From sequence record NC_048673.1: a stretch of DNA of 64,000 nucleotides. The stretch is one strand, 5' to 3'. The position numbers and the translations under genes were made by a program. Below are positions 9,724 to 57,319 of this stretch, one piece after another. The notes below the pieces were generated by a model. The model made no database searches. It worked only from the letters and a program-made list of their open reading frames with translations, and was not told the DNA's origin. The first letter of the stretch is position 1, and each line of letters begins with the position of its first letter.

Positions 9724-10287
9724 TTAGATTTTACTTTGGAATGGGTGTCCTGCACCGATACCGACCGGGTTTTGTTTTGGTAGGATTTCCAAATCGTTTA
9801 CACCAACAACACTCATAGATGAGTAACTAAATGTTACATTACCTATAAGGGCTGGGTTTCCGTCATCAACATAGGACAATTCTATATCGTCCAATGAACT
9901 CGGGAATGGGTCATGAAACTTGAAAGTCAATACTATATTCTTTTTTGAGTTATCCAGAATATGAACCAAAATAGATCTAGGTCTAGCACCCGGTAGATGG
10001 GCGGTGGAATTGAAAGTTCTACTATCAGTAACAGAGATCATCCATTGATACAACTCTTTATAAGATTCGAAATTTTCATCAATCAAAAATCTAATCCTAA
10101 ATGGTTCGTAAATGATCTTCGAACCCGGCATAAGTCCGGACGTCATCTGATTTATCGAAACTCTTGTTATATCCATTTCCATAGTTGGAAGAACAACAGA
10201 TTGAGCTGATGTTACAAAGTTGGCGGTTGTGTTTGCGTCTGGGATTTCCAGACGCATGTTTGTTATGTGTGCTTGATTATGTATCAT
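9724..10287 (-). CDS. 3: tail tube terminator/completion protein gp3
   Basis: NQAHITN...SAQSV, YEPFRIRFLIDE, ILDNSK resemble T4 gp3. Confidence 0.88.
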   Translation of the reverse strand: MIHNQAHITNMRLEIPDANTTANFVTSAQSVVLPTMEMDITRVSINQMTSGLMPGSKIIYEPFRIRFLIDENFESYKELYQWMISVTDSRTFNSTAHLPGARPRSILVHILDNSKKNIVLTFKFHDPFPSSLDDIELSYVDDGNPALIGNVTFSYSSMSVVGVNDLEILPKQNPVGIGAGHPFQSKI

Positions 10288-12152
10288 GTTGACGGTTGAA
10301 CCCCATATGAATATTGTGGTTGGTCTGGTCTAAATTCACCAAAACCAGACGGTAGAACGGAATTCATACTATTATATGTGGTATTATTTACAGCAGCCAT
10401 TAACGCACCTTCTTGACGTCGTGCATCTCGTTCTTCCTTTTCACGTTGTTGTTTAGCTCGGAATTCTTCAACCTCTTGGTTTCTTTTCTCAAGGGTTTTA
10501 AATACAGGCTCATTTTCACCCGCCTTAATTTCATTCCCTAATTTAGATTCCGGTTGAGCTTCACTAGCATTAGCTTTTCCAAACAATGACCCGGTAAGAC
10601 TTTCCCAAGCACCCTTCGCAGCATCAACACCCTTATCCAACAGATCTGGATTCTCTTTGGCGAAGTTATACAACTCATAAGCCATCAAGCCAGCACCAAC
10701 AAAAGGAATTGCTCTACCGGCGACACGTACCGCCATACCAGCACCAGTTAATGCGCTTTTTGGTATAAATTTTGAGGCTGATTTTGCAGCATCGGTAGCA
10801 ACAGACCAACCCTTTTTACCAAGATCAGCAGCCCTTGACAAAATACCAGCCTTCCCTTTAGGGGTAGGTGTCTTTGTTTTAGGTGTCTCAATTTTTGCTG
10901 GTTGCCCCGGTCTTGGTTCTGGTGTAGGTGGCTTCTTTCCATCCGGTTGTGTAGTTTTCGGAGACTTCTTAGGATCCTTAGACACATCGTTTGGATTAAC
11001 ACCACCAGAGCCAGACGATGGTGTAGGGGTCTTACTTCCCAATCCCGGTATCTTATCAAACAACCCCGAAAACTTAGCAATTAAACCACCAACAGCAGCA
11101 GATAGGGCACCCGCAATCATAGGAGCCAAACCAAGAACCGCACCAGATAGAACACTGATACCAGAAACAAGACCACTAAGAACAAATCCAACACCACCAA
11201 TCAGTTTACCGATCAACATGGACATCTGGATACCTTTAAGAACATCGATTAAGCTTTTATGACGCTTTTCGTTGTTCTCTCGTTCTCTTCCATTTTCTTG
11301 TCTTTCTTTCTTTTGCTCTTGGTTATTTCTATCTGTTTTTACTTTGTCTTCTGGTTTGTTTTGTGGGATCTGTTGGAATCTAGAAGTAGCATCAGCCTTC
11401 TTCTCTTCATAAGCCGCATTCGCTTTTGCATCTAATTTCTTTTCCTTACGGGCGTTATGTGCATCAATAATAGACCCACCAACAAACTTCGTTGCATTAG
11501 CGGCCTGATTATAACCGGGAATAGTTGATAACAAATCGTTTATGGTTCCAGTAACCATACCGATACCAGCGGACATAGTATGACCAAGTATTTTCGCTGT
11601 TGCTGATGTTTCTGATTTCTTCATTCGATCAACTATATTAGCTTTTTTTGCTATCTCTCGAACAAATTTACCAGTTTTTTGATTTTCTTCTTTGAAATTT
11701 TCCACAAATTCACGACGATCACCAACTTCGCGTTGTATAAATTCTTTCAAAGTCTCCCTAGTGTCTTCCTGCATAGGTTTGGCAGTTTCCCCCTGTTCCG
11801 GGTTCTGACTTTTTACACCTTGGCTATAATCCACTAGGGGTTGTTTATTATTTAAAATGTCTTCCAGTTGCTTTCGTCTAGCTGAAACTAATTCGTTTTC
11901 AACCTTATTACTACGCTTATTATCCTTTCTGGCACCTTTTATCTGGTTCGCTAATTTTTCTTGTTCTTGTGCGACTTCCAGACTGGAATCAGAGGTAATA
12001 TCATAAGACGCGGTAAGGTCTTTTGTTGAGTTGGACAACTTTTCTGTCTTGTCGTCCAACTTAAGCATCGAATCAGAAACAATATCCATAGCATCCGTGA
12101 CATCTCGAACCGATTTATCAAGTTCGTTCTGTTTCTGCTTGTCAATCATCAC
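10284..12152 (-). CDS. 29: tape measure / baseplate hub protein (gp29-like)
   Basis: 622 aa with coiled coils, a central Gly/Ala hydrophobic stretch, a Pro/Lys-rich linker and RAIPFVGAGL; lies downstream of gp26/51. Confidence 0.7.
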   Translation of the reverse strand: MMIDKQKQNELDKSVRDVTDAMDIVSDSMLKLDDKTEKLSNSTKDLTASYDITSDSSLEVAQEQEKLANQIKGARKDNKRSNKVENELVSARRKQLEDILNNKQPLVDYSQGVKSQNPEQGETAKPMQEDTRETLKEFIQREVGDRREFVENFKEENQKTGKFVREIAKKANIVDRMKKSETSATAKILGHTMSAGIGMVTGTINDLLSTIPGYNQAANATKFVGGSIIDAHNARKEKKLDAKANAAYEEKKADATSRFQQIPQNKPEDKVKTDRNNQEQKKERQENGRERENNEKRHKSLIDVLKGIQMSMLIGKLIGGVGFVLSGLVSGISVLSGAVLGLAPMIAGALSAAVGGLIAKFSGLFDKIPGLGSKTPTPSSGSGGVNPNDVSKDPKKSPKTTQPDGKKPPTPEPRPGQPAKIETPKTKTPTPKGKAGILSRAADLGKKGWSVATDAAKSASKFIPKSALTGAGMAVRVAGRAIPFVGAGLMAYELYNFAKENPDLLDKGVDAAKGAWESLTGSLFGKANASEAQPESKLGNEIKAGENEPVFKTLEKRNQEVEEFRAKQQREKEERDARRQEGALMAAVNNTTYNSMNSVLPSGFGEFRPDQPQYSYGVQPST

Positions 12153-12320
12153 TTAGTCCTTTTCTCTCGCCTGTTCTTTGAGATCGTTTAGGTAGAGGTG
12201 AACATAAACACCAAATTCAAAGGGGGTCATATCCTCAAGATCCGAATGGCTCCATCCATCTTTTCTAAGCTTATATACCGTATTAAAATGATCGTATATG
12301 GTATGGTTAACAAGCGTTAT
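12153..12320 (-). CDS. 51: gp51-like C-terminal module (55 aa, no start codon; probably reached by -1 frameshift from gp26)
   Basis: ITLVNHTIYDHFNTVYKLRKDGWSHSDLEDMTPFEFGVYVHLYLNDL resembles the gp51 C-terminus; lies in the -1 frame of gp26. Confidence 0.72.
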   Translation of the reverse strand: MTLVNHTIYDHFNTVYKLRKDGWSHSDLEDMTPFEFGVYVHLYLNDLKEQAREKD

Positions 12321-13102
12321 GCGAAAAAACTTTCTACCCCTTTAAGTGTAACAATTTCTTGGTGTCCACATTTTTTACACTTTACAGGTATATTTAGAGT
12401 ATGTTGGGGGAGGGATGTTACAAATTTACCCATTTTGGTCAAAGCAACTGAATCGGCGTATTCCATAATTTCAGAAATATCCTCATACGGAATATCAACA
12501 CCAACCTTAACAACCTGATCTCCCATATGAACTTCGTCAATACAGCGATTGATTAAGTTAAACAAGTCGGACTCAACTTCTACGTTGAAATATTCAACCT
12601 CGCTGATATTAGGATATCTCATATAAACTGTCATGTTCTCATTCAGAACAATTTTGTTATCTGGTGCATCCGACAATTTAGCGTTATTCAAGTTTACGTT
12701 TACTTTGATATCAGAGCCACAACGAATAATTTCACCATATTGGTCATATTGAACATTACCATCTTCATCAAGAATTTCGTTGGCGCAAGTAAACATAACC
12801 GGAACAGTAGGACTTGCTTTTGATAACTTATACAAAGCTAGATAAACTGCTTCCAAGTCAAACACAGGTAAAAGGTCTACATCAACATTATCAGTTAGGA
12901 TACAGTTTTTTACGATTTGGATGATTGCATCATCGATTCCAGTATTGGCTTCGTTAGCTAACATCAACAGTTTCATTTCTTTCATCAAGAAAGCACGAAC
13001 CTTGATCTTTCTACCATCTGATAAAGTTACATTGGTCTGCTGTACGTTTTTCTGCATAGCAGCAAGAAGTACACTCTTGTCAATTGTGGTTTTGTTTGTC
13101 AT
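12317..13102 (-). CDS. 26: baseplate hub assembly chaperone gp26
   Basis: VRAFLMKEMKLL, MRYP and CKKCG...KGVESFFA resemble T4 gp26. Confidence 0.85.
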   Translation of the reverse strand: MTNKTTIDKSVLLAAMQKNVQQTNVTLSDGRKIKVRAFLMKEMKLLMLANEANTGIDDAIIQIVKNCILTDNVDVDLLPVFDLEAVYLALYKLSKASPTVPVMFTCANEILDEDGNVQYDQYGEIIRCGSDIKVNVNLNNAKLSDAPDNKIVLNENMTVYMRYPNISEVEYFNVEVESDLFNLINRCIDEVHMGDQVVKVGVDIPYEDISEIMEYADSVALTKMGKFVTSLPQHTLNIPVKCKKCGHQEIVTLKGVESFFA

Positions 13103-13310: not shown

Positions 13311-14252
13311 TTAACGAATGGCTTTCACAACGCCTGTAGTACGTCTTATGATACTCTCTATAGAGTCGATGGTGTTCTCTTCACCCTTAGTAGGAACATG
13401 CACTGTAGTTGATACAGCGAATGTGACGGTAAAGGTTGCTACCTGAGAATTGTTCTCAAAATCTAGTTGAACTTCACCTACCTCTATGGGAAAGCACCCT
13501 GTATTATGTACAGTGGATTGCTTAACTCCATGACGGTCTAACGTGATGACGTCAATATCCTTTGCATACGTATTATAAAATCCAAATTGTCCATTTCTTG
13601 GGTTGACAATTGTATTCTGCCATGTTAACATCAAAGAACGTTCCTCATAAGAAGGGGAACAGTAAAACGTCATACTCATGGTTCCGTAGTTTCTACCTCT
13701 TACTTCGTGTCGAGGTAGTTTGTCTGTACGGTTGATTGTCGTTTCCAAAGTAGAACTAGGGAGTCCGACGCTTTTTACCATAAGTGCAAGATCGCGGTTT
13801 ACATCATAATCGGTTCCCAGAAATCCATCAAGGATCTCTCCTGCTCCCGGTATGATCCGGATCAAGGACGGATCCCAAGCACCAAAAATCTTCTTCATGC
13901 TAGGCGTGAGGATTTTGTGTGCTTGTCCCAAAGCAATGTCCTGAACTCTATGCCAAGCATAACTTGTACCAGAGAAAAGACTATCATTGACGTCCATCCC
14001 GCTGCTTGAGTCCGGAAATATCGGTAAATCCCTATCAAAAACACCATCACTGAATATAGAGGTTCGGAAATCTCCGAACCTTACAATAAACATGTTTGGT
14101 CTAGCCAAATCGGTATTCTCAACTTTCCGCATAAACCTAGTTAGATCGGGGATCTCGCTTGCATCCCCACCATCGTTTAATAAATCTTCACCAAACCCGA
14201 TAGTACTATCTATCATACTATCTATGGTTGGAATAGGTGGTATTAAGTTCAT
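13311..14252 (-). CDS. 54: baseplate tail tube initiator gp54
   Basis: LARPNMF tail-tube-family motif, WQNTIVNP, FTVTFA; ATG overlaps the gp2 stop (TAATG). Confidence 0.82.
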   Translation of the reverse strand: MNLIPPIPTIDSMIDSTIGFGEDLLNDGGDASEIPDLTRFMRKVENTDLARPNMFIVRFGDFRTSIFSDGVFDRDLPIFPDSSSGMDVNDSLFSGTSYAWHRVQDIALGQAHKILTPSMKKIFGAWDPSLIRIIPGAGEILDGFLGTDYDVNRDLALMVKSVGLPSSTLETTINRTDKLPRHEVRGRNYGTMSMTFYCSPSYEERSLMLTWQNTIVNPRNGQFGFYNTYAKDIDVITLDRHGVKQSTVHNTGCFPIEVGEVQLDFENNSQVATFTVTFAVSTTVHVPTKGEENTIDSIESIIRRTTGVVKAIR

Positions 14253-15250
14253 TAGTATGATCTCCAAACGGAATTCGTATTATAGGTCTTCGGAGGAACA
14301 CCAGATACAAACCGTTGAGTCGGTAGATTAATAACAGAACTCCAATCCTGCGGTTTAATCTCCATTAATGGACCCTTAATATGACCCGGCAAATACGCTT
14401 TGATCATATGGTCTGCACCTCTCATTCCCTTAACCTTACCCCAGTTGATATTTAGGGATGTACGGTTGGTAATCCTCTCTGTGGTTGCATGTTTCAGCAA
14501 CTCTTCCATAAATTCTTTACGGGCTTTGATCGGGATGTAGTGAAGGTTGAGACCCAACATCAAACCTTTGTGTTTTGCACTTAGGCCAAGATATACGATC
14601 AGGGGGAATTTATCCCAGTATGGTAGTGTTGCCTTATGTTTTGCGTCATATGCGAAAGTATACAATCGACCAGCAATTGGTCTTGTTACTTGGTGACCAC
14701 GAACGTTTTTCTTTATGAAATTGTTAAACCATTCCGTTGACTTCTTCTGAGACTTCACAGGCTCTTTTTCGTGTTGCCTTACTTTATTTCTAAAGTCAGC
14801 CAATAGCATCTGATATTTTTCGGCTTTAGATAGTTTTCTTCCGCTTATTTGTGCGTCTTTTAATTTCTTAGCCAGTAGAATATCTTGCTTGAATCTTCTG
14901 AATGCCCGTTCCGTGGTTTCTTTATTAAGTCCACGTCCTTCAATATAATTTTTTAGAGTAATGCTACTCTTTTCTTTTTGTGTCAAATAATCAACACCAA
15001 GCTCAATCCATTGTTGTTTATTCTTGTTTGGGTTTACCAGAGAATAATAAGTCTTTATTTCTTCTCTGTGTCTGCGCATAGCTCTACTGAATGTTTCATA
15101 ATTCAACCCTTTTTCCTCTGCATATTTCTTTGCAGTAAGACTTGGGTTCTTTTTCTTGGCGTTCATATAATCAACACCAACATCAATCCATTGTTTTCTA
15201 TTGCGTTTTTCTGTTGTGGACTCTGCACGTTCAGTTATTTCGAATATCAT
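14252..15250 (-). CDS. 2: DNA end protector gp2
   Basis: YDAKHKATLPYWDKFPL and GLNLHYIP. Confidence 0.95.
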   Translation of the reverse strand: MIFEITERAESTTEKRNRKQWIDVGVDYMNAKKKNPSLTAKKYAEEKGLNYETFSRAMRRHREEIKTYYSLVNPNKNKQQWIELGVDYLTQKEKSSITLKNYIEGRGLNKETTERAFRRFKQDILLAKKLKDAQISGRKLSKAEKYQMLLADFRNKVRQHEKEPVKSQKKSTEWFNNFIKKNVRGHQVTRPIAGRLYTFAYDAKHKATLPYWDKFPLIVYLGLSAKHKGLMLGLNLHYIPIKARKEFMEELLKHATTERITNRTSLNINWGKVKGMRGADHMIKAYLPGHIKGPLMEIKPQDWSSVINLPTQRFVSGVPPKTYNTNSVWRSY

Positions 15251-56521: not shown

Positions 56522-57319
56522 TTAGTAAATGGTATGGAAACGAGAATTACGACTCTCGCGCAATGTCACACTACCATTAATCTGGATGTAATAAAGAACT
56601 GTTTTCAGAAGTGCTTTATCCGGTTCGCGTTCATGAGTATCAATAATACTCTTCCAAGACGGTCCTTTCTCAAGGATCCAATCAAGAATCCAATACGGGC
56701 AATTGAGGTATTGGTTACCAACAGCCCCAATCAGATTTACTTTCGGCTTGAAACCATAAGTCAAATCCGGTTCTTGGGTATCTTTAGTAGTTTCCAAATT
56801 CATTTTTTCTTTAACGAACTTCTTTTCATCTTCAATTAATTCGTCAAGAGTTTTAAACCCAGAAGAATCAATATATTCTGGTTGTTTCGGTGGAGTGAAT
56901 TCAATTTTAACATCGTTGGGAGTATTGATATTAACCACCCCATCATCAATTTTGATTGATTCAACCACACCAAGTTCAATAACCTCATCTACATTGTCGA
57001 ATTCGTCATCGACTACAACTGGTTCGACAAAAGGGGTTTTTTCTTTCGGTTCCGGTGCAAGGTCCAGTTTTTCATTCTCTTTGGCGTCCGCCATTTCAAG
57101 GAGTTTAACGATCATATCGTCAACCGAAGTATTAGACTTGCTAATTTTAAAACCACATTCCTTAGCATATGCTTGAATTTTCGCTTTCGCTTCTGGTGCG
57201 GTATTAGCATCAACAATTTCGTTGATTACCCCAAGGTCAAGTTCTTTTTGTTTTTTCACAGTAGACTTTTTTGGTTTAGTTTCTTTTTCTACTGGTTCTT
57301 CTACATAATTCAATGCCAT
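56522..57319 (-). CDS. inh: inhibitor of prohead protease
   Basis: AKAKIQAYAKECGFKISK, PYWILDWI, GSVTLRESRNSRF; late promoter at 57346. Confidence 0.92.
   Translation of the reverse strand: MALNYVEEPVEKETKPKKSTVKKQKELDLGVINEIVDANTAPEAKAKIQAYAKECGFKISKSNTSVDDMIVKLLEMADAKENEKLDLAPEPKEKTPFVEPVVVDDEFDNVDEVIELGVVESIKIDDGVVNINTPNDVKIEFTPPKQPEYIDSSGFKTLDELIEDEKKFVKEKMNLETTKDTQEPDLTYGFKPKVNLIGAVGNQYLNCPYWILDWILEKGPSWKSIIDTHEREPDKALLKTVLYYIQINGSVTLRESRNSRFHTIY

What the first reader, a model, noticed from the sequence alone, without database searches (positions are those of the whole stretch)
12153..12345. Probable -1 programmed frameshift fusing gp26 to a start-less gp51-like module upstream of the tape measure gene
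Seen: gp26 ends ...GTA GAA AGT TTT TTC GCA TAA. This contains a canonical X XXY YYZ slippery heptamer, T TTT TTC (12329-12323), 7 nt downstream of an SD-like AAGGGG. The -1 frame has a stop just upstream (12344-12342), then stays open for 55 more codons (RITLVNHTIYDHFNTVYKL...DMTPFEFGVYVHL) with no ATG/GTG/TTG until its last 25 codons. Its stop abuts the tape measure start. Known: lambda G/GT-type tail chaperones use a -1 frameshift just upstream of the tape measure gene. From memory, T4 gp51 is a gp26-like domain plus a C-terminal LVN...MIP.E segment that aligns with this extension. Inference: this phage makes both the gp26 and gp51 forms from one gene by recoding, whereas T4 encodes them as separate paralogs.
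Basis: partly seen in the sequence, partly recalled or inferred. Interest (0 to 1): 0.85.

Follow-up and report, generated by a model that had tools for sequence, protein, structure and literature searches.

The report
Frameshifted tail chaperone gene, T4-like phage
In this T4-like Aeromonas phage, gene 26 very probably makes a short and a long tail-assembly chaperone from one gene, by a ribosome slipping back one base at a run of six T's; the call is sound and missing from the database record, but the phenomenon was already published for T4-like phages in 2022.

Summary
The window is Aeromonas phage AS-zj (100% identity). Gene 26 (12317-13102, minus strand; Pfam PF12322) ends two codons after an in-frame T_TTT_TTC heptamer (12329-12323). 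The -1 frame is open from 12341 to 12153 and has no start codon in its first 37 codons. Its stop abuts the start of a 622-aa ORF.

Comparative evidence is decisive. The same T-run heptamer sits in the same slot in 16 of 16 diverse T4-like lineages and in 79 of 79 cyanophage contigs. The joint chance of the required codon choices is about 1e-10. The downstream module is always in the -1 frame and evolves under coding constraint. It is homologous to the C-terminal tail of T4-type gp51 (profile E 5e-9 against T4 gp51), which is a gp26-like domain plus this tail. AS-zj has only one such gene.

- The 622-aa "tape measure" is assigned by position and composition only; it shows no similarity to T4 gp29.
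- The idea is not new. Vladimirov, Gautam and Davidson (Virology 2022), as summarised by two citing papers, identified these genes as the tail assembly chaperones of T4-like phages, with poly-T slip sites or separate short and long genes.

The value here is annotation: none of about 25 GenBank records inspected joins the two frames.

The parts
12317..13102 (-). Gene 26: zero-frame ORF of 261 aa, the short form of the tail/hub assembly chaperone (TAC-N, gp26 type)
   Evidence: PF12322 E 2.5e-54; phrog_150 E 7e-59. Annotated 'baseplate hub subunit' in MF448340. The AlphaFold model is confident, pLDDT 85.7.
12323..12329 (-). Slippery heptamer T_TTT_TTC in the X_XXY_YYZ register; proposed site of the -1 shift
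   Evidence: Sequence. Same slot in 16/16 lineages and 79/79 cyanophage contigs. Joint probability of the codon choices about 1e-10. Identical in CC2, AP1 and vB_AdhaM_G2.
12317..12319 (-). Zero-frame stop codon, one codon after the heptamer
   Evidence: The stop follows the heptamer by 3 nt in 14 of 16 lineages and by 0 nt in 2 of 16. It follows by 3 nt in 79/79 contigs.
12337..12342 (-). SD-like purine motif 7 nt upstream of the heptamer; possible clade-specific stimulator
   Evidence: Duplex with the anti-SD is -7.9 kcal/mol, better than any other 25-nt window of gene 26. It is kept in different forms in phage 65 and Aswh_1 but absent in S-RSM4, Vibrio D479 and RSP15. It overlaps a conserved Gly codon.
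12153..12341 (-). -1 frame open stretch of 62 codons plus stop. From 12323 downstream it encodes the 56-residue C-terminal module of the long form (TAC-NC, the gp51 equivalent). Predicted long form: 260 + 56 = 316 aa
   Evidence: phrog_634 E 2.2e-12. tblastn finds it in 290 phage records. It aligns to the gp51 tail. Differences by codon position are 8/4/28 and 6/5/31. There is no start codon in the first 37 codons.
10284..12152 (-). 622-aa ORF, candidate tape measure protein; not annotated in the GenBank record
   Evidence: phrog_11300 E 2e-265, function unknown. No CDS in MF448340. Synteny gp54 - gp26 - this ORF - gp3 in Aeh1, phage 65, nt-1, D479 and LPCS28. Almost all-helical low-confidence model. 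Charged N-terminal half, hydrophobic Gly-rich segment 300-365, Pro-rich linker. No similarity to T4 gp29.
13311..14252 (-). gp54-like baseplate-tail tube initiator, upstream neighbour
   Evidence: phrog_45 E 1e-46. phmmer with T4 gp54 E 4e-13. Annotation.
9724..10287 (-). gp3-like tail tube terminator (tail completion and sheath stabiliser), downstream neighbour of the 622-aa ORF
   Evidence: PF06841 E 1.3e-6; phrog_45. Annotation.

Best explanation
Gene 26 of Aeromonas phage AS-zj encodes the tail (hub) assembly chaperone in two forms.

Short form: most ribosomes read the zero frame and terminate one codon after the heptamer. This gives the 261-aa short form, equivalent to gp26.

Long form: a minority of ribosomes, with two tRNA-Phe on UUU UUC, slip back one base on U_UUU_UUC (12329-12323) and continue in the -1 frame for 56 more codons. 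This gives a long form of about 316 aa. Its extra C-terminal module is the counterpart of the C-terminal tail of T4 gp51.

By analogy with the lambda G/GT and P2 E/E+E' chaperones, I infer that the shared N-terminal domain holds the tape measure protein, which here would be the 622-aa product of the adjacent gene. I also infer that the extra module of the long form docks the complex to the growing tube or hub.

What is shown: the anatomy, the conservation, the homology to gp51, and the single gene copy in this genome.

What is inferred: that the shift is ribosomal, its efficiency, any stimulation by the nearby stop codon and by the SD-like motif in this clade, and the binding partners.
For: - Anatomy.
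- Heptamer in the same slot, 0 or 1 codon before the stop, in 16/16 lineages of Straboviridae, Kyanoviridae, Pootjesviridae and unclassified Pseudomonas, Ralstonia, Xanthomonas and Acidovorax phages, and in 79/79 IMG/VR cyanophage contigs.
- The preceding codon varies (AGT, AAT, TCT, GAT) but always ends in T, and the first Phe codon is always TTT, even where TTT makes up 13-25% of Phe codons. The joint probability is about 1e-10.
- The module is always in the -1 frame. Homology begins at the two Phe of the heptamer, and start codons sit at varying positions further downstream.
- Differences against two relatives fall mostly on the third codon position of the -1 frame.
- Module matches: phrog_634 at E 2e-12; a T4-type gp51 tail at E 5e-7; the module profile hits T4 gp51 residues 200-244 at E 5e-9 and no T4-type gp26.
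- T4-type gp51 is PF12322 plus this tail, and T4-type gp26 ends at the slip position.
- AS-zj has one family member and one module in the whole genome.
- The gp26 model's best meaningful PDB match is the HK97 tail assembly chaperone 2ob9, at probability 0.82 and TM 0.50.
- Literature: Vladimirov et al. 2022, as cited in PMC10885494 and PMC12846349. Leiman et al. 2010 list gp26 and gp51 as hub assembly chaperones.
Against: - No protein or RNA data are available for this phage.
- There is no significant downstream RNA structure in the window (z 0.01 and -1.46). The cyanophage stem shows no compensatory changes.
- The SD-like motif is clade-specific and overlaps a conserved Gly codon.
- Sequence alone cannot separate ribosomal from transcriptional slippage on a T-run, since both give the same protein.
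- The match to the HK97 chaperone is not statistically significant (E 0.49).
- The tape measure identity of the neighbour rests on position and composition only.
- In RSP15 and ACP17 the gene pair is not followed by a long ORF of this kind.
- Direct BLASTP of the module against T4's own gp51 is not significant.
Confidence: 0.72

Rival explanations
1. Transcriptional slippage. RNA polymerase occasionally adds one U while copying the T6 run. Ordinary zero-frame translation of those transcripts then gives the same long form.
For: The site is a pure homopolymer, and pf16 and RSP15 have seven T's. There is no conserved downstream structure. [quoted passage not shown]
Against: - From established knowledge, efficient slippage by bacterial RNA polymerase usually needs runs of about eight or more. 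Here the run is six in 14 of 16 lineages and in 79/79 contigs, with no trend towards longer runs.
- The run always sits in the exact X_XXY_YYZ register, with a stop 0-1 codon downstream. However, the register is also fixed by the conserved Phe-Phe.
- One citing paper reads the 2022 work as describing separate short and long genes. The other reads it as describing poly-T -1 frameshift signals.
Confidence: 0.17
2. The downstream frame is a separate small gene with its own start, as annotated in many records ('gp51', 30-60 aa). It would be made without recoding.
For: Many GenBank records annotate such small ORFs: S-RSM4 44 aa, phiM9 59 aa, D479 30 aa, nt-1 55 aa.
Against: - In the window the first start-type codon is codon 38 of 62. 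That would discard more than half of the conserved module.
- Start positions differ in every lineage and lie downstream of conserved residues.
- Homology begins at the heptamer.
- In T4-type phages the module exists only as the covalent tail of a full-length gp51.
- AS-zj, Aeh1, LPCS28 and ACP17 have no callable small ORF at all.
Confidence: 0.05
3. Artefact or decay. Either the run is really seven T's and the gene is one fused ORF, or the downstream frame is a dead remnant.
For: Homopolymer runs are error-prone in some sequencing chemistries.
Against: - The T6 run is identical in four independently isolated close relatives, in phage 65 and Aswh_1 at about 70% nucleotide identity, in 13 further lineages, and in 79 metagenomic contigs.
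- The third-position substitution bias and the amino-acid conservation show the frame is under selection.
Confidence: 0.01

Closest known systems
Tail assembly chaperones of T4-like phages: gp26 (short) and gp51 (long). Vladimirov, Gautam and Davidson, Virology 2022, doi 10.1016/j.virol.2021.11.003
   Same: Same protein family (PF12322, phrog_150, phrog_634). Same logic of a short and a long form. According to citing papers, poly-T slip signals in the short-form genes of T4-like phages, and separate short and long genes in others.
   Different: Nothing in kind, as far as I can tell without the paper, which is not held. AS-zj is an unannotated instance. I cannot say whether the paper covers the Ceceduovirus clade, the clade-specific SD-like motif, or the non-gp29 neighbour.
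T4 genes 26 and 51 (separate genes on opposite strands)
   Same: gp51 is a gp26-like PF12322 domain plus the C-terminal module. gp26 ends 2-3 residues after the position of the slip site.
   Different: T4 hard-wires the two forms in two genes, with no overlap and no frameshift. Its genes lie next to genes 27, 28 and 29, which AS-zj lacks in recognisable form.
Lambda G/GT and P2 E/E+E' tail assembly chaperones (Levin et al. 1993; Christie et al. 2002; Xu, Hendrix and Duda 2004)
   Same: Two overlapping frames, a -1 shift near the end of the first frame, a start-less second frame, and a position just upstream of a long helical protein. As far as I recall, the P2 site is a T-run heptamer of the same class. 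I could not verify this, because the paper is not held.
   Different: No sequence similarity. The gp26 domain, at about 260 aa, is roughly twice the size of those chaperones and carries conserved Cys pairs. The fold match to the HK97 chaperone is weak. The upstream neighbour is the tube initiator gp54, not the major tube protein.
Vandenendeviridae / Andersonviridae chaperone locus (Pseudomonas phage Adele paper, PMC12846349)
   Same: [quoted passage not shown] The downstream region is routinely mis-annotated as a small hypothetical gene.
   Different: A different protein family and a different motif, as reported there.

Membership tests
Frameshifted tail assembly chaperone pair (lambda G/GT type; TAC-N / TAC-NC) | A second frame overlaps the 3' end of the first in the -1 frame and lacks its own start | tested here: met
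   The -1 frame opens 25 nt before the end of gene 26. There is no start codon in its first 37 codons. The frame relation is the same in 16/16 lineages.
Frameshifted tail assembly chaperone pair (lambda G/GT type; TAC-N / TAC-NC) | A conserved slippery heptamer X_XXY_YYZ, in register, within the overlap | tested here: met
   T_TTT_TTC at 12329-12323. Conserved in 16/16 lineages and 79/79 contigs; codon-choice probability about 1e-10.
Frameshifted tail assembly chaperone pair (lambda G/GT type; TAC-N / TAC-NC) | Located immediately upstream of the tape measure gene | tested here: inconclusive
   The pair abuts a 622-aa ORF that is helical, charged and carries a Gly-rich hydrophobic core, flanked by gp54 and gp3. 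No family assigns it a function, and it is unrelated to T4 gp29. The adjacency is absent in RSP15 and ACP17.
Frameshifted tail assembly chaperone pair (lambda G/GT type; TAC-N / TAC-NC) | Fold of the known chaperones (for example HK97, PDB 2ob9) | tested here: inconclusive
   The Foldseek hit to 2ob9 has probability 0.82, TM 0.50 (normalised by the target) over 105 columns, and E 0.49.
Frameshifted tail assembly chaperone pair (lambda G/GT type; TAC-N / TAC-NC) | Two protein products in a fixed ratio; needed for tail assembly; absent from virions | not testable with these tools
   This needs proteomics of infected cells and of virions.
T4 gp26/gp51 family (Pfam PF12322 T4_baseplate; phrog_150) | A full-length PF12322 domain | tested here: met
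   E 2.5e-54, profile positions 6-219 of 219. T4 gp26 and gp51 match the same model.
T4 gp51 'baseplate hub assembly catalyst' (phrog_634) | The C-terminal module that distinguishes gp51 from gp26 | tested here: met
   The -1 module matches phrog_634 positions 55-112 of 121 at E 2.2e-12. The module profile hits T4 gp51 residues 200-244 at E 5e-9 and no T4-type gp26. Direct BLASTP against T4 gp51 is not significant.
T4 gp29 tape measure (Pfam PF25671), for the 622-aa neighbour | Sequence similarity to gp29 | tested here: not met
   No Pfam hit. hhalign probability 0.3%. T4 gp29 itself matches PF25671. phmmer with T4 gp29 finds nothing in the whole AS-zj genome.
Transcriptional slippage sites | A long homopolymer, usually about eight or more bases (from established knowledge) | tested here: not met
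   The run is six T's in the window and in 14 of 16 lineages, and seven in two.

The most novel reading that the evidence does not exclude
The frameshifted single gene is the ancestral state of the whole T4 superfamily, and T4's gene pair 26/51 arose by duplication of a copy in which the two frames were already fused. T4-type gp26 proteins would then be truncated long forms. They run 2-3 residues past the conserved Phe-Phe, and those residues resemble the start of the gp51 tail. Alongside this, the frameshift stimulators were replaced clade by clade: an SD-like motif in the Aeromonas clade, and hairpins in Pseudomonas and Acidovorax phages. The chaperone would also serve a tape measure family (phrog_11300) unrelated to gp29. 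I cannot tell how much of this the 2022 paper already covers.
Probability: 0.3. Interest if true: 0.4.

Novelty: already known. Interest (0 to 1): 0.27.

Why it matters
The finding corrects annotation on a wide scale. The AS-zj record annotates neither the long form nor the 622-aa gene. None of about 25 GenBank or RefSeq records inspected joins the two frames. Many records carry a fictitious 30-60 aa 'gp51' gene, or nothing at all. PHROGs files the module as a separate family. Correct gene models matter for counting the core genes of T4-like phages, for virion and infected-cell proteomics, and for understanding how tail length is set in the many T4 relatives that lack a recognisable gp29. As biology it confirms a published idea rather than opening a new one.

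Tried and rejected
- Downstream stimulatory RNA structure: none in the window (z 0.01 over 93 nt; z -1.46 over 60 nt). The close relatives phage 65 and Aswh_1 are worse than shuffles. The cyanophage 5-bp stem has only one-sided changes.
- Homology of the 622-aa ORF to T4 gp29 or any named family: Pfam, NCBIfam, PDB by sequence and by profile, hhalign and the large protein search gave nothing beyond a weak SMC coiled-coil match. Its AlphaFold model is low-confidence (pLDDT 40), so I did not search with its fold.
- The search for related loci with the seven-lineage gp26 alignment failed, because no stretch was conserved enough. With the Vibrio protein it found one weak locus.
- A second frameshift-like configuration at 56760-57176 is spurious. 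It lies antisense to a real gene.
- A second gp26/gp51 gene in AS-zj: none.
- The primary 2022 paper and the P2 paper could not be read. All ten literature searches are used.
- I built no joined-frame protein. The two frames were searched apart throughout.

Full report
IDENTITY OF THE WINDOW. The 2-kb stretch around the finding is 100% identical to Aeromonas phage AS-zj (MF448340; Straboviridae, Emmerichvirinae, Ceceduovirus). It is 95-99% identical to CC2, AS-sw, Assk and others, and about 70% identical to phage 65 and Aswh_1. The window corresponds to record positions 165930-229929.

THE OBSERVATION. On the minus strand, the 261-aa ORF 12317-13102 ends with AGT TTT TTC GCA TAA.
- The heptamer T_TTT_TTC (12329-12323) is in the X_XXY_YYZ register.
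- The -1 frame has a stop at 12344-12342, then 62 open codons, with its own stop at 12155-12153.
- The only start-type codon in that frame is codon 38.
- GTG ATG at 12152-12147 begins a 622-aa ORF.

The motif by itself is weak evidence. The window has 74 runs of six or more T or A, and 7 of 107 long ORFs have an in-register heptamer in their last ten codons. One other case with a long -1 frame is antisense to a real gene.

WHAT THE PIECES ARE.
- The 261-aa product is a full PF12322 'T4_baseplate' domain (E 2.5e-54) and matches phrog_150 'baseplate hub'.
- The -1 piece has no Pfam family. It matches phrog_634 'baseplate hub assembly catalyst', that is gp51, at positions 55-112 of 121 (E 2.2e-12). 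It also matches the last 50 positions of phrog_150.
- The neighbours are gp4, gp2 and gp54 upstream. Downstream lie the 622-aa ORF, gp3 (tube terminator) and gp1 (dNMP kinase).

COMPARATIVE EVIDENCE. tblastn with the -1 piece finds 290 phage records (cyanophages, Vibrio, Aeromonas, Rhizobium, Cronobacter and others). In 284 of them at least 80% of the piece is covered. The match usually lies under the junction of features called 'baseplate hub' and 'baseplate hub assembly catalyst'.

I fetched 16 lineages that differ widely, with gp26 identity to the window of 23-72% among the seven that I aligned: phage 65, Aswh_1, Aeh1, Cronobacter LPCS28, Vibrio D479, nt-1 and TCU-VP04, Synechococcus S-RSM4 and S-CRM01, Sinorhizobium phiM9, Pseudomonas Astolliot and pf16, Ralstonia RSP15, Xanthomonas X1, and Acidovorax ACP17. 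In all 16:
- the module is in the -1 frame;
- a T-run heptamer (T6 followed by C in 13, by T in 2, by G in 1) sits 0 or 1 codon before the gp26 stop;
- the module's conserved residues begin with the two Phe read from the heptamer.

All 79 analysable IMG/VR cyanophage contigs have T_TTT_TTC in that slot.

The codon before the heptamer varies (AGT, AAT, TCT, GAT) but always ends in T. The first Phe codon is always TTT, even in phages where TTT is 13-25% of Phe codons. The product of these probabilities over the 16 lineages is about 1e-10.

Start-type codons in the -1 frame occur at different places in every lineage, all downstream of conserved residues. Between AS-zj and phage 65 or Aswh_1, differences in the module fall 8/4/28 and 6/5/31 on codon positions 1/2/3 of the -1 frame. 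This is the signature of a translated frame.

Of the window's module residues, numbered from the first Phe, these are shared by at least 60% of lineages: F1 and F2 (100%), R3 (62%), L6 (75%), L21 (62%), L31 (62%), E32 (75%), M34 (81%), P36 (81%), F37 (62%), E38 (88%), Y42 (75%) and L45 (69%).

ASSEMBLY ERROR EXCLUDED. CC2, AP1 and vB_AdhaM_G2, which are independent isolates from China and India, have the identical run and frame layout.

RELATION TO T4. T4's own gp26 (208 aa) and gp51 (249 aa), taken from record HM137666, both match PF12322 over its whole length.
- gp51 matches phrog_150 to position 280 of 282 and also matches phrog_634. gp26 stops at position 235 of phrog_150.
- In an alignment of natural proteins, T4-type gp26 ends 2-3 residues after the conserved Phe-Phe. 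T4-type gp51 reads on from the same column for about 50 residues.
- The window's module aligns to residues 197-253 of the gp51 of Shigella phage vB_SdyM_006 (30% identity, E 5e-7), starting at the slip-site residues.
- A profile of the 16 modules as they stand hits gp51 of vB_SdyM_006 (E 1e-17), POP12 (1e-13), EcS1 (5e-10) and T4 (5e-9, residues 200-244). It hits none of the four T4-type gp26 proteins.
- Direct BLASTP of the module against T4 gp51 is not significant, so the link to T4 itself is profile-mediated.

I searched the AS-zj genome in five separate pieces. It has exactly one ORF of the family (E 5e-68), exactly one module (E 3e-28), and no phmmer hit to T4 gp27, gp28, gp29 or gp51.

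MECHANISM. A tandem -1 slip of two tRNA-Phe on U_UUU_UUC is the simplest reading. Possible stimulators:
- The zero-frame stop lies 0-1 codon after the heptamer everywhere.
- In the window's clade there is an SD-like motif 5-7 nt upstream. Its pairing to the anti-SD (-7.9 kcal/mol) is better than anywhere else in gene 26. Phage 65 and Aswh_1 keep it in different spellings. It is absent in several other clades and overlaps a conserved Gly codon.
- No downstream structure is supported in the window. Astolliot, pf16 and ACP17 do have significant hairpins (z -3.5 to -4.2). The cyanophage stem shows no covariation.

Transcriptional slippage would give the same protein and cannot be excluded from sequence. 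A six-base run is short for it, by established knowledge.

THE NEIGHBOUR. The 622-aa ORF is not annotated in MF448340. Its family (phrog_11300) has no known function.
- It shows no similarity to T4 gp29 or PF25671, and none to any PDB chain.
- A large protein search returned only unnamed close relatives.
- In favour of a tape measure role: its conserved place between the chaperone gene and gp3, with gp54 upstream, in Aeromonas, Vibrio and Cronobacter phages, and between the chaperone gene and a gene annotated 'tail tube protein' in Pseudomonas phage Astolliot.
- Also in favour: a size close to gp29; a charged N-terminal half with a weak SMC coiled-coil match; a hydrophobic Gly-rich segment at 300-365 and a Pro-rich linker; and an almost all-helical, low-confidence model.

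This is inference, not a membership result.

STRUCTURE. The gp26 model is confident (pLDDT 85.7, pTM 0.75).
- Against the PDB nothing is significant. The hit with the highest probability is the HK97 tail assembly chaperone 2ob9 (probability 0.82, TM 0.50 by target, E 0.49).
- Against predicted viral structures, the model matches gp26/gp51 relatives across T4-like phages and parts of longer proteins of several jumbo phages.

PRIOR ART. Eight keyword searches combining gp26, gp51, 'baseplate hub', 'tail assembly chaperone', frameshift, 'slippery' and related terms were run. None returned a paper that itself describes a frameshift in these genes. [quoted passage not shown] PRFect summarises it as follows: some T4-like phages carry one short gene and one long fused gene instead of frameshifting. 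The Adele paper (PMC12846349) cites the same work for poly-T -1 slip signals in the short-form genes of T4-like phages. Leiman et al. 2010 (PMC3004832) already list gp26 and gp51 as hub assembly chaperones. The 2022 paper is not held, so I know it only through its title and these two summaries. On that basis the finding is a correct, independent rediscovery.

ANNOTATION STATE. In about 25 records inspected, no CDS is flagged as joined. The module is left unannotated (AS-zj, Aeh1, LPCS28, ACP17, CC2). Elsewhere only a downstream part of it is called as a small separate gene, of 26 to 59 aa, labelled 'gp51', 'baseplate hub assembly catalyst' or 'hypothetical protein' (phage 65, S-RSM4, phiM9, D479, nt-1, TCU-VP04, S-CRM01, RSP15, Astolliot, pf16, X1).

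RULES. I built no sequence that joins the two frames. The frames were translated, searched and aligned apart, and I do not repeat the junction peptide quoted in the finding.

VERDICT. My confidence is about 0.9 that two forms are made by recoding at the T-run, and about 0.72 that the shift is ribosomal. The novelty is low because the idea is already published. The remaining value is in annotation and in the open identity of the tape measure in these phages.

Noticed in passing
window 10284-12152 (-): The 622-aa ORF has no CDS in GenBank MF448340; the record has a gap between positions 176216 and 178246. Its homologues are annotated in phage 65 (65p120), CC2 (CC2_346) and Aswh_1. It belongs to phrog_11300, function unknown, and is unrelated to T4 gp29.
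   Followed up: yes
alignment A4; L097:3752-4375, L098:2465-3091, L008:1286-1867, L099:2661-3206: T4-type gp26 proteins run 2-3 residues (up to 6 in two of the four) past the conserved Phe-Phe, and those residues resemble the first residues of the gp51 tail. This hints that T4 gp26 is a truncated copy of a hard-wired long form.
   Followed up: partly
L091:3229-3335, L092:3148-3254, L095:2513-2619; window 12337-12342: Candidate frameshift stimulators differ by clade. There are significant hairpins just after the heptamer in Pseudomonas phages Astolliot and pf16 and in Acidovorax ACP17 (z -3.5 to -4.2). There is an SD-like motif instead in the Aeromonas CC2/65 clade and in S-CRM01.
   Followed up: partly
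window 12317-13102 (-), residues C106, C128, C242, C245: Four cysteines are invariant in the clade alignment A7. There is a weak zinc-ribbon Pfam hit at residues 239-247 (E 0.027). The chaperone domain may bind zinc.
   Followed up: no
L099:1934-3209 (Pectobacterium phage POP12): A full-length gp51 and a gp26 lie in tandem on one strand, overlapping by 14 nt and directly after gp54. This looks like an arrangement intermediate between the frameshifted single gene and T4's divergent pair.
   Followed up: no
window 14252-15250 (-): The gp2-like DNA end protector (phrog_429, residues 137-332) carries an extra N-terminal piece that matches an HTH DNA-binding family (phrog_32288, residues 1-69). Phage 65 has an HNH homing endonuclease between gp2 and gp4 that AS-zj lacks.
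   Followed up: no
window 56760-57176 (+): An in-register T_TTA_AAA heptamer near the end of an ORF, with a 65-codon -1 frame. It is spurious: the ORF is antisense to a 265-aa gene at 56522-57319 (-).
   Followed up: yes
BFVD matches to model m92b800e8cc60: The gp26 fold matches parts of longer proteins (313-686 aa) of jumbo phages phiRSL1, PaBG, RP12 and phiEaH2. These may be their unrecognised tail assembly chaperones.
   Followed up: no
L093 (Ralstonia RSP15), L095 (Acidovorax ACP17): In these two phages the frameshifted gene pair is not followed by a long helical ORF. Opposite-strand genes or a 200-aa ORF follow instead. Adjacency to the tape measure candidate is therefore not universal.
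   Followed up: no
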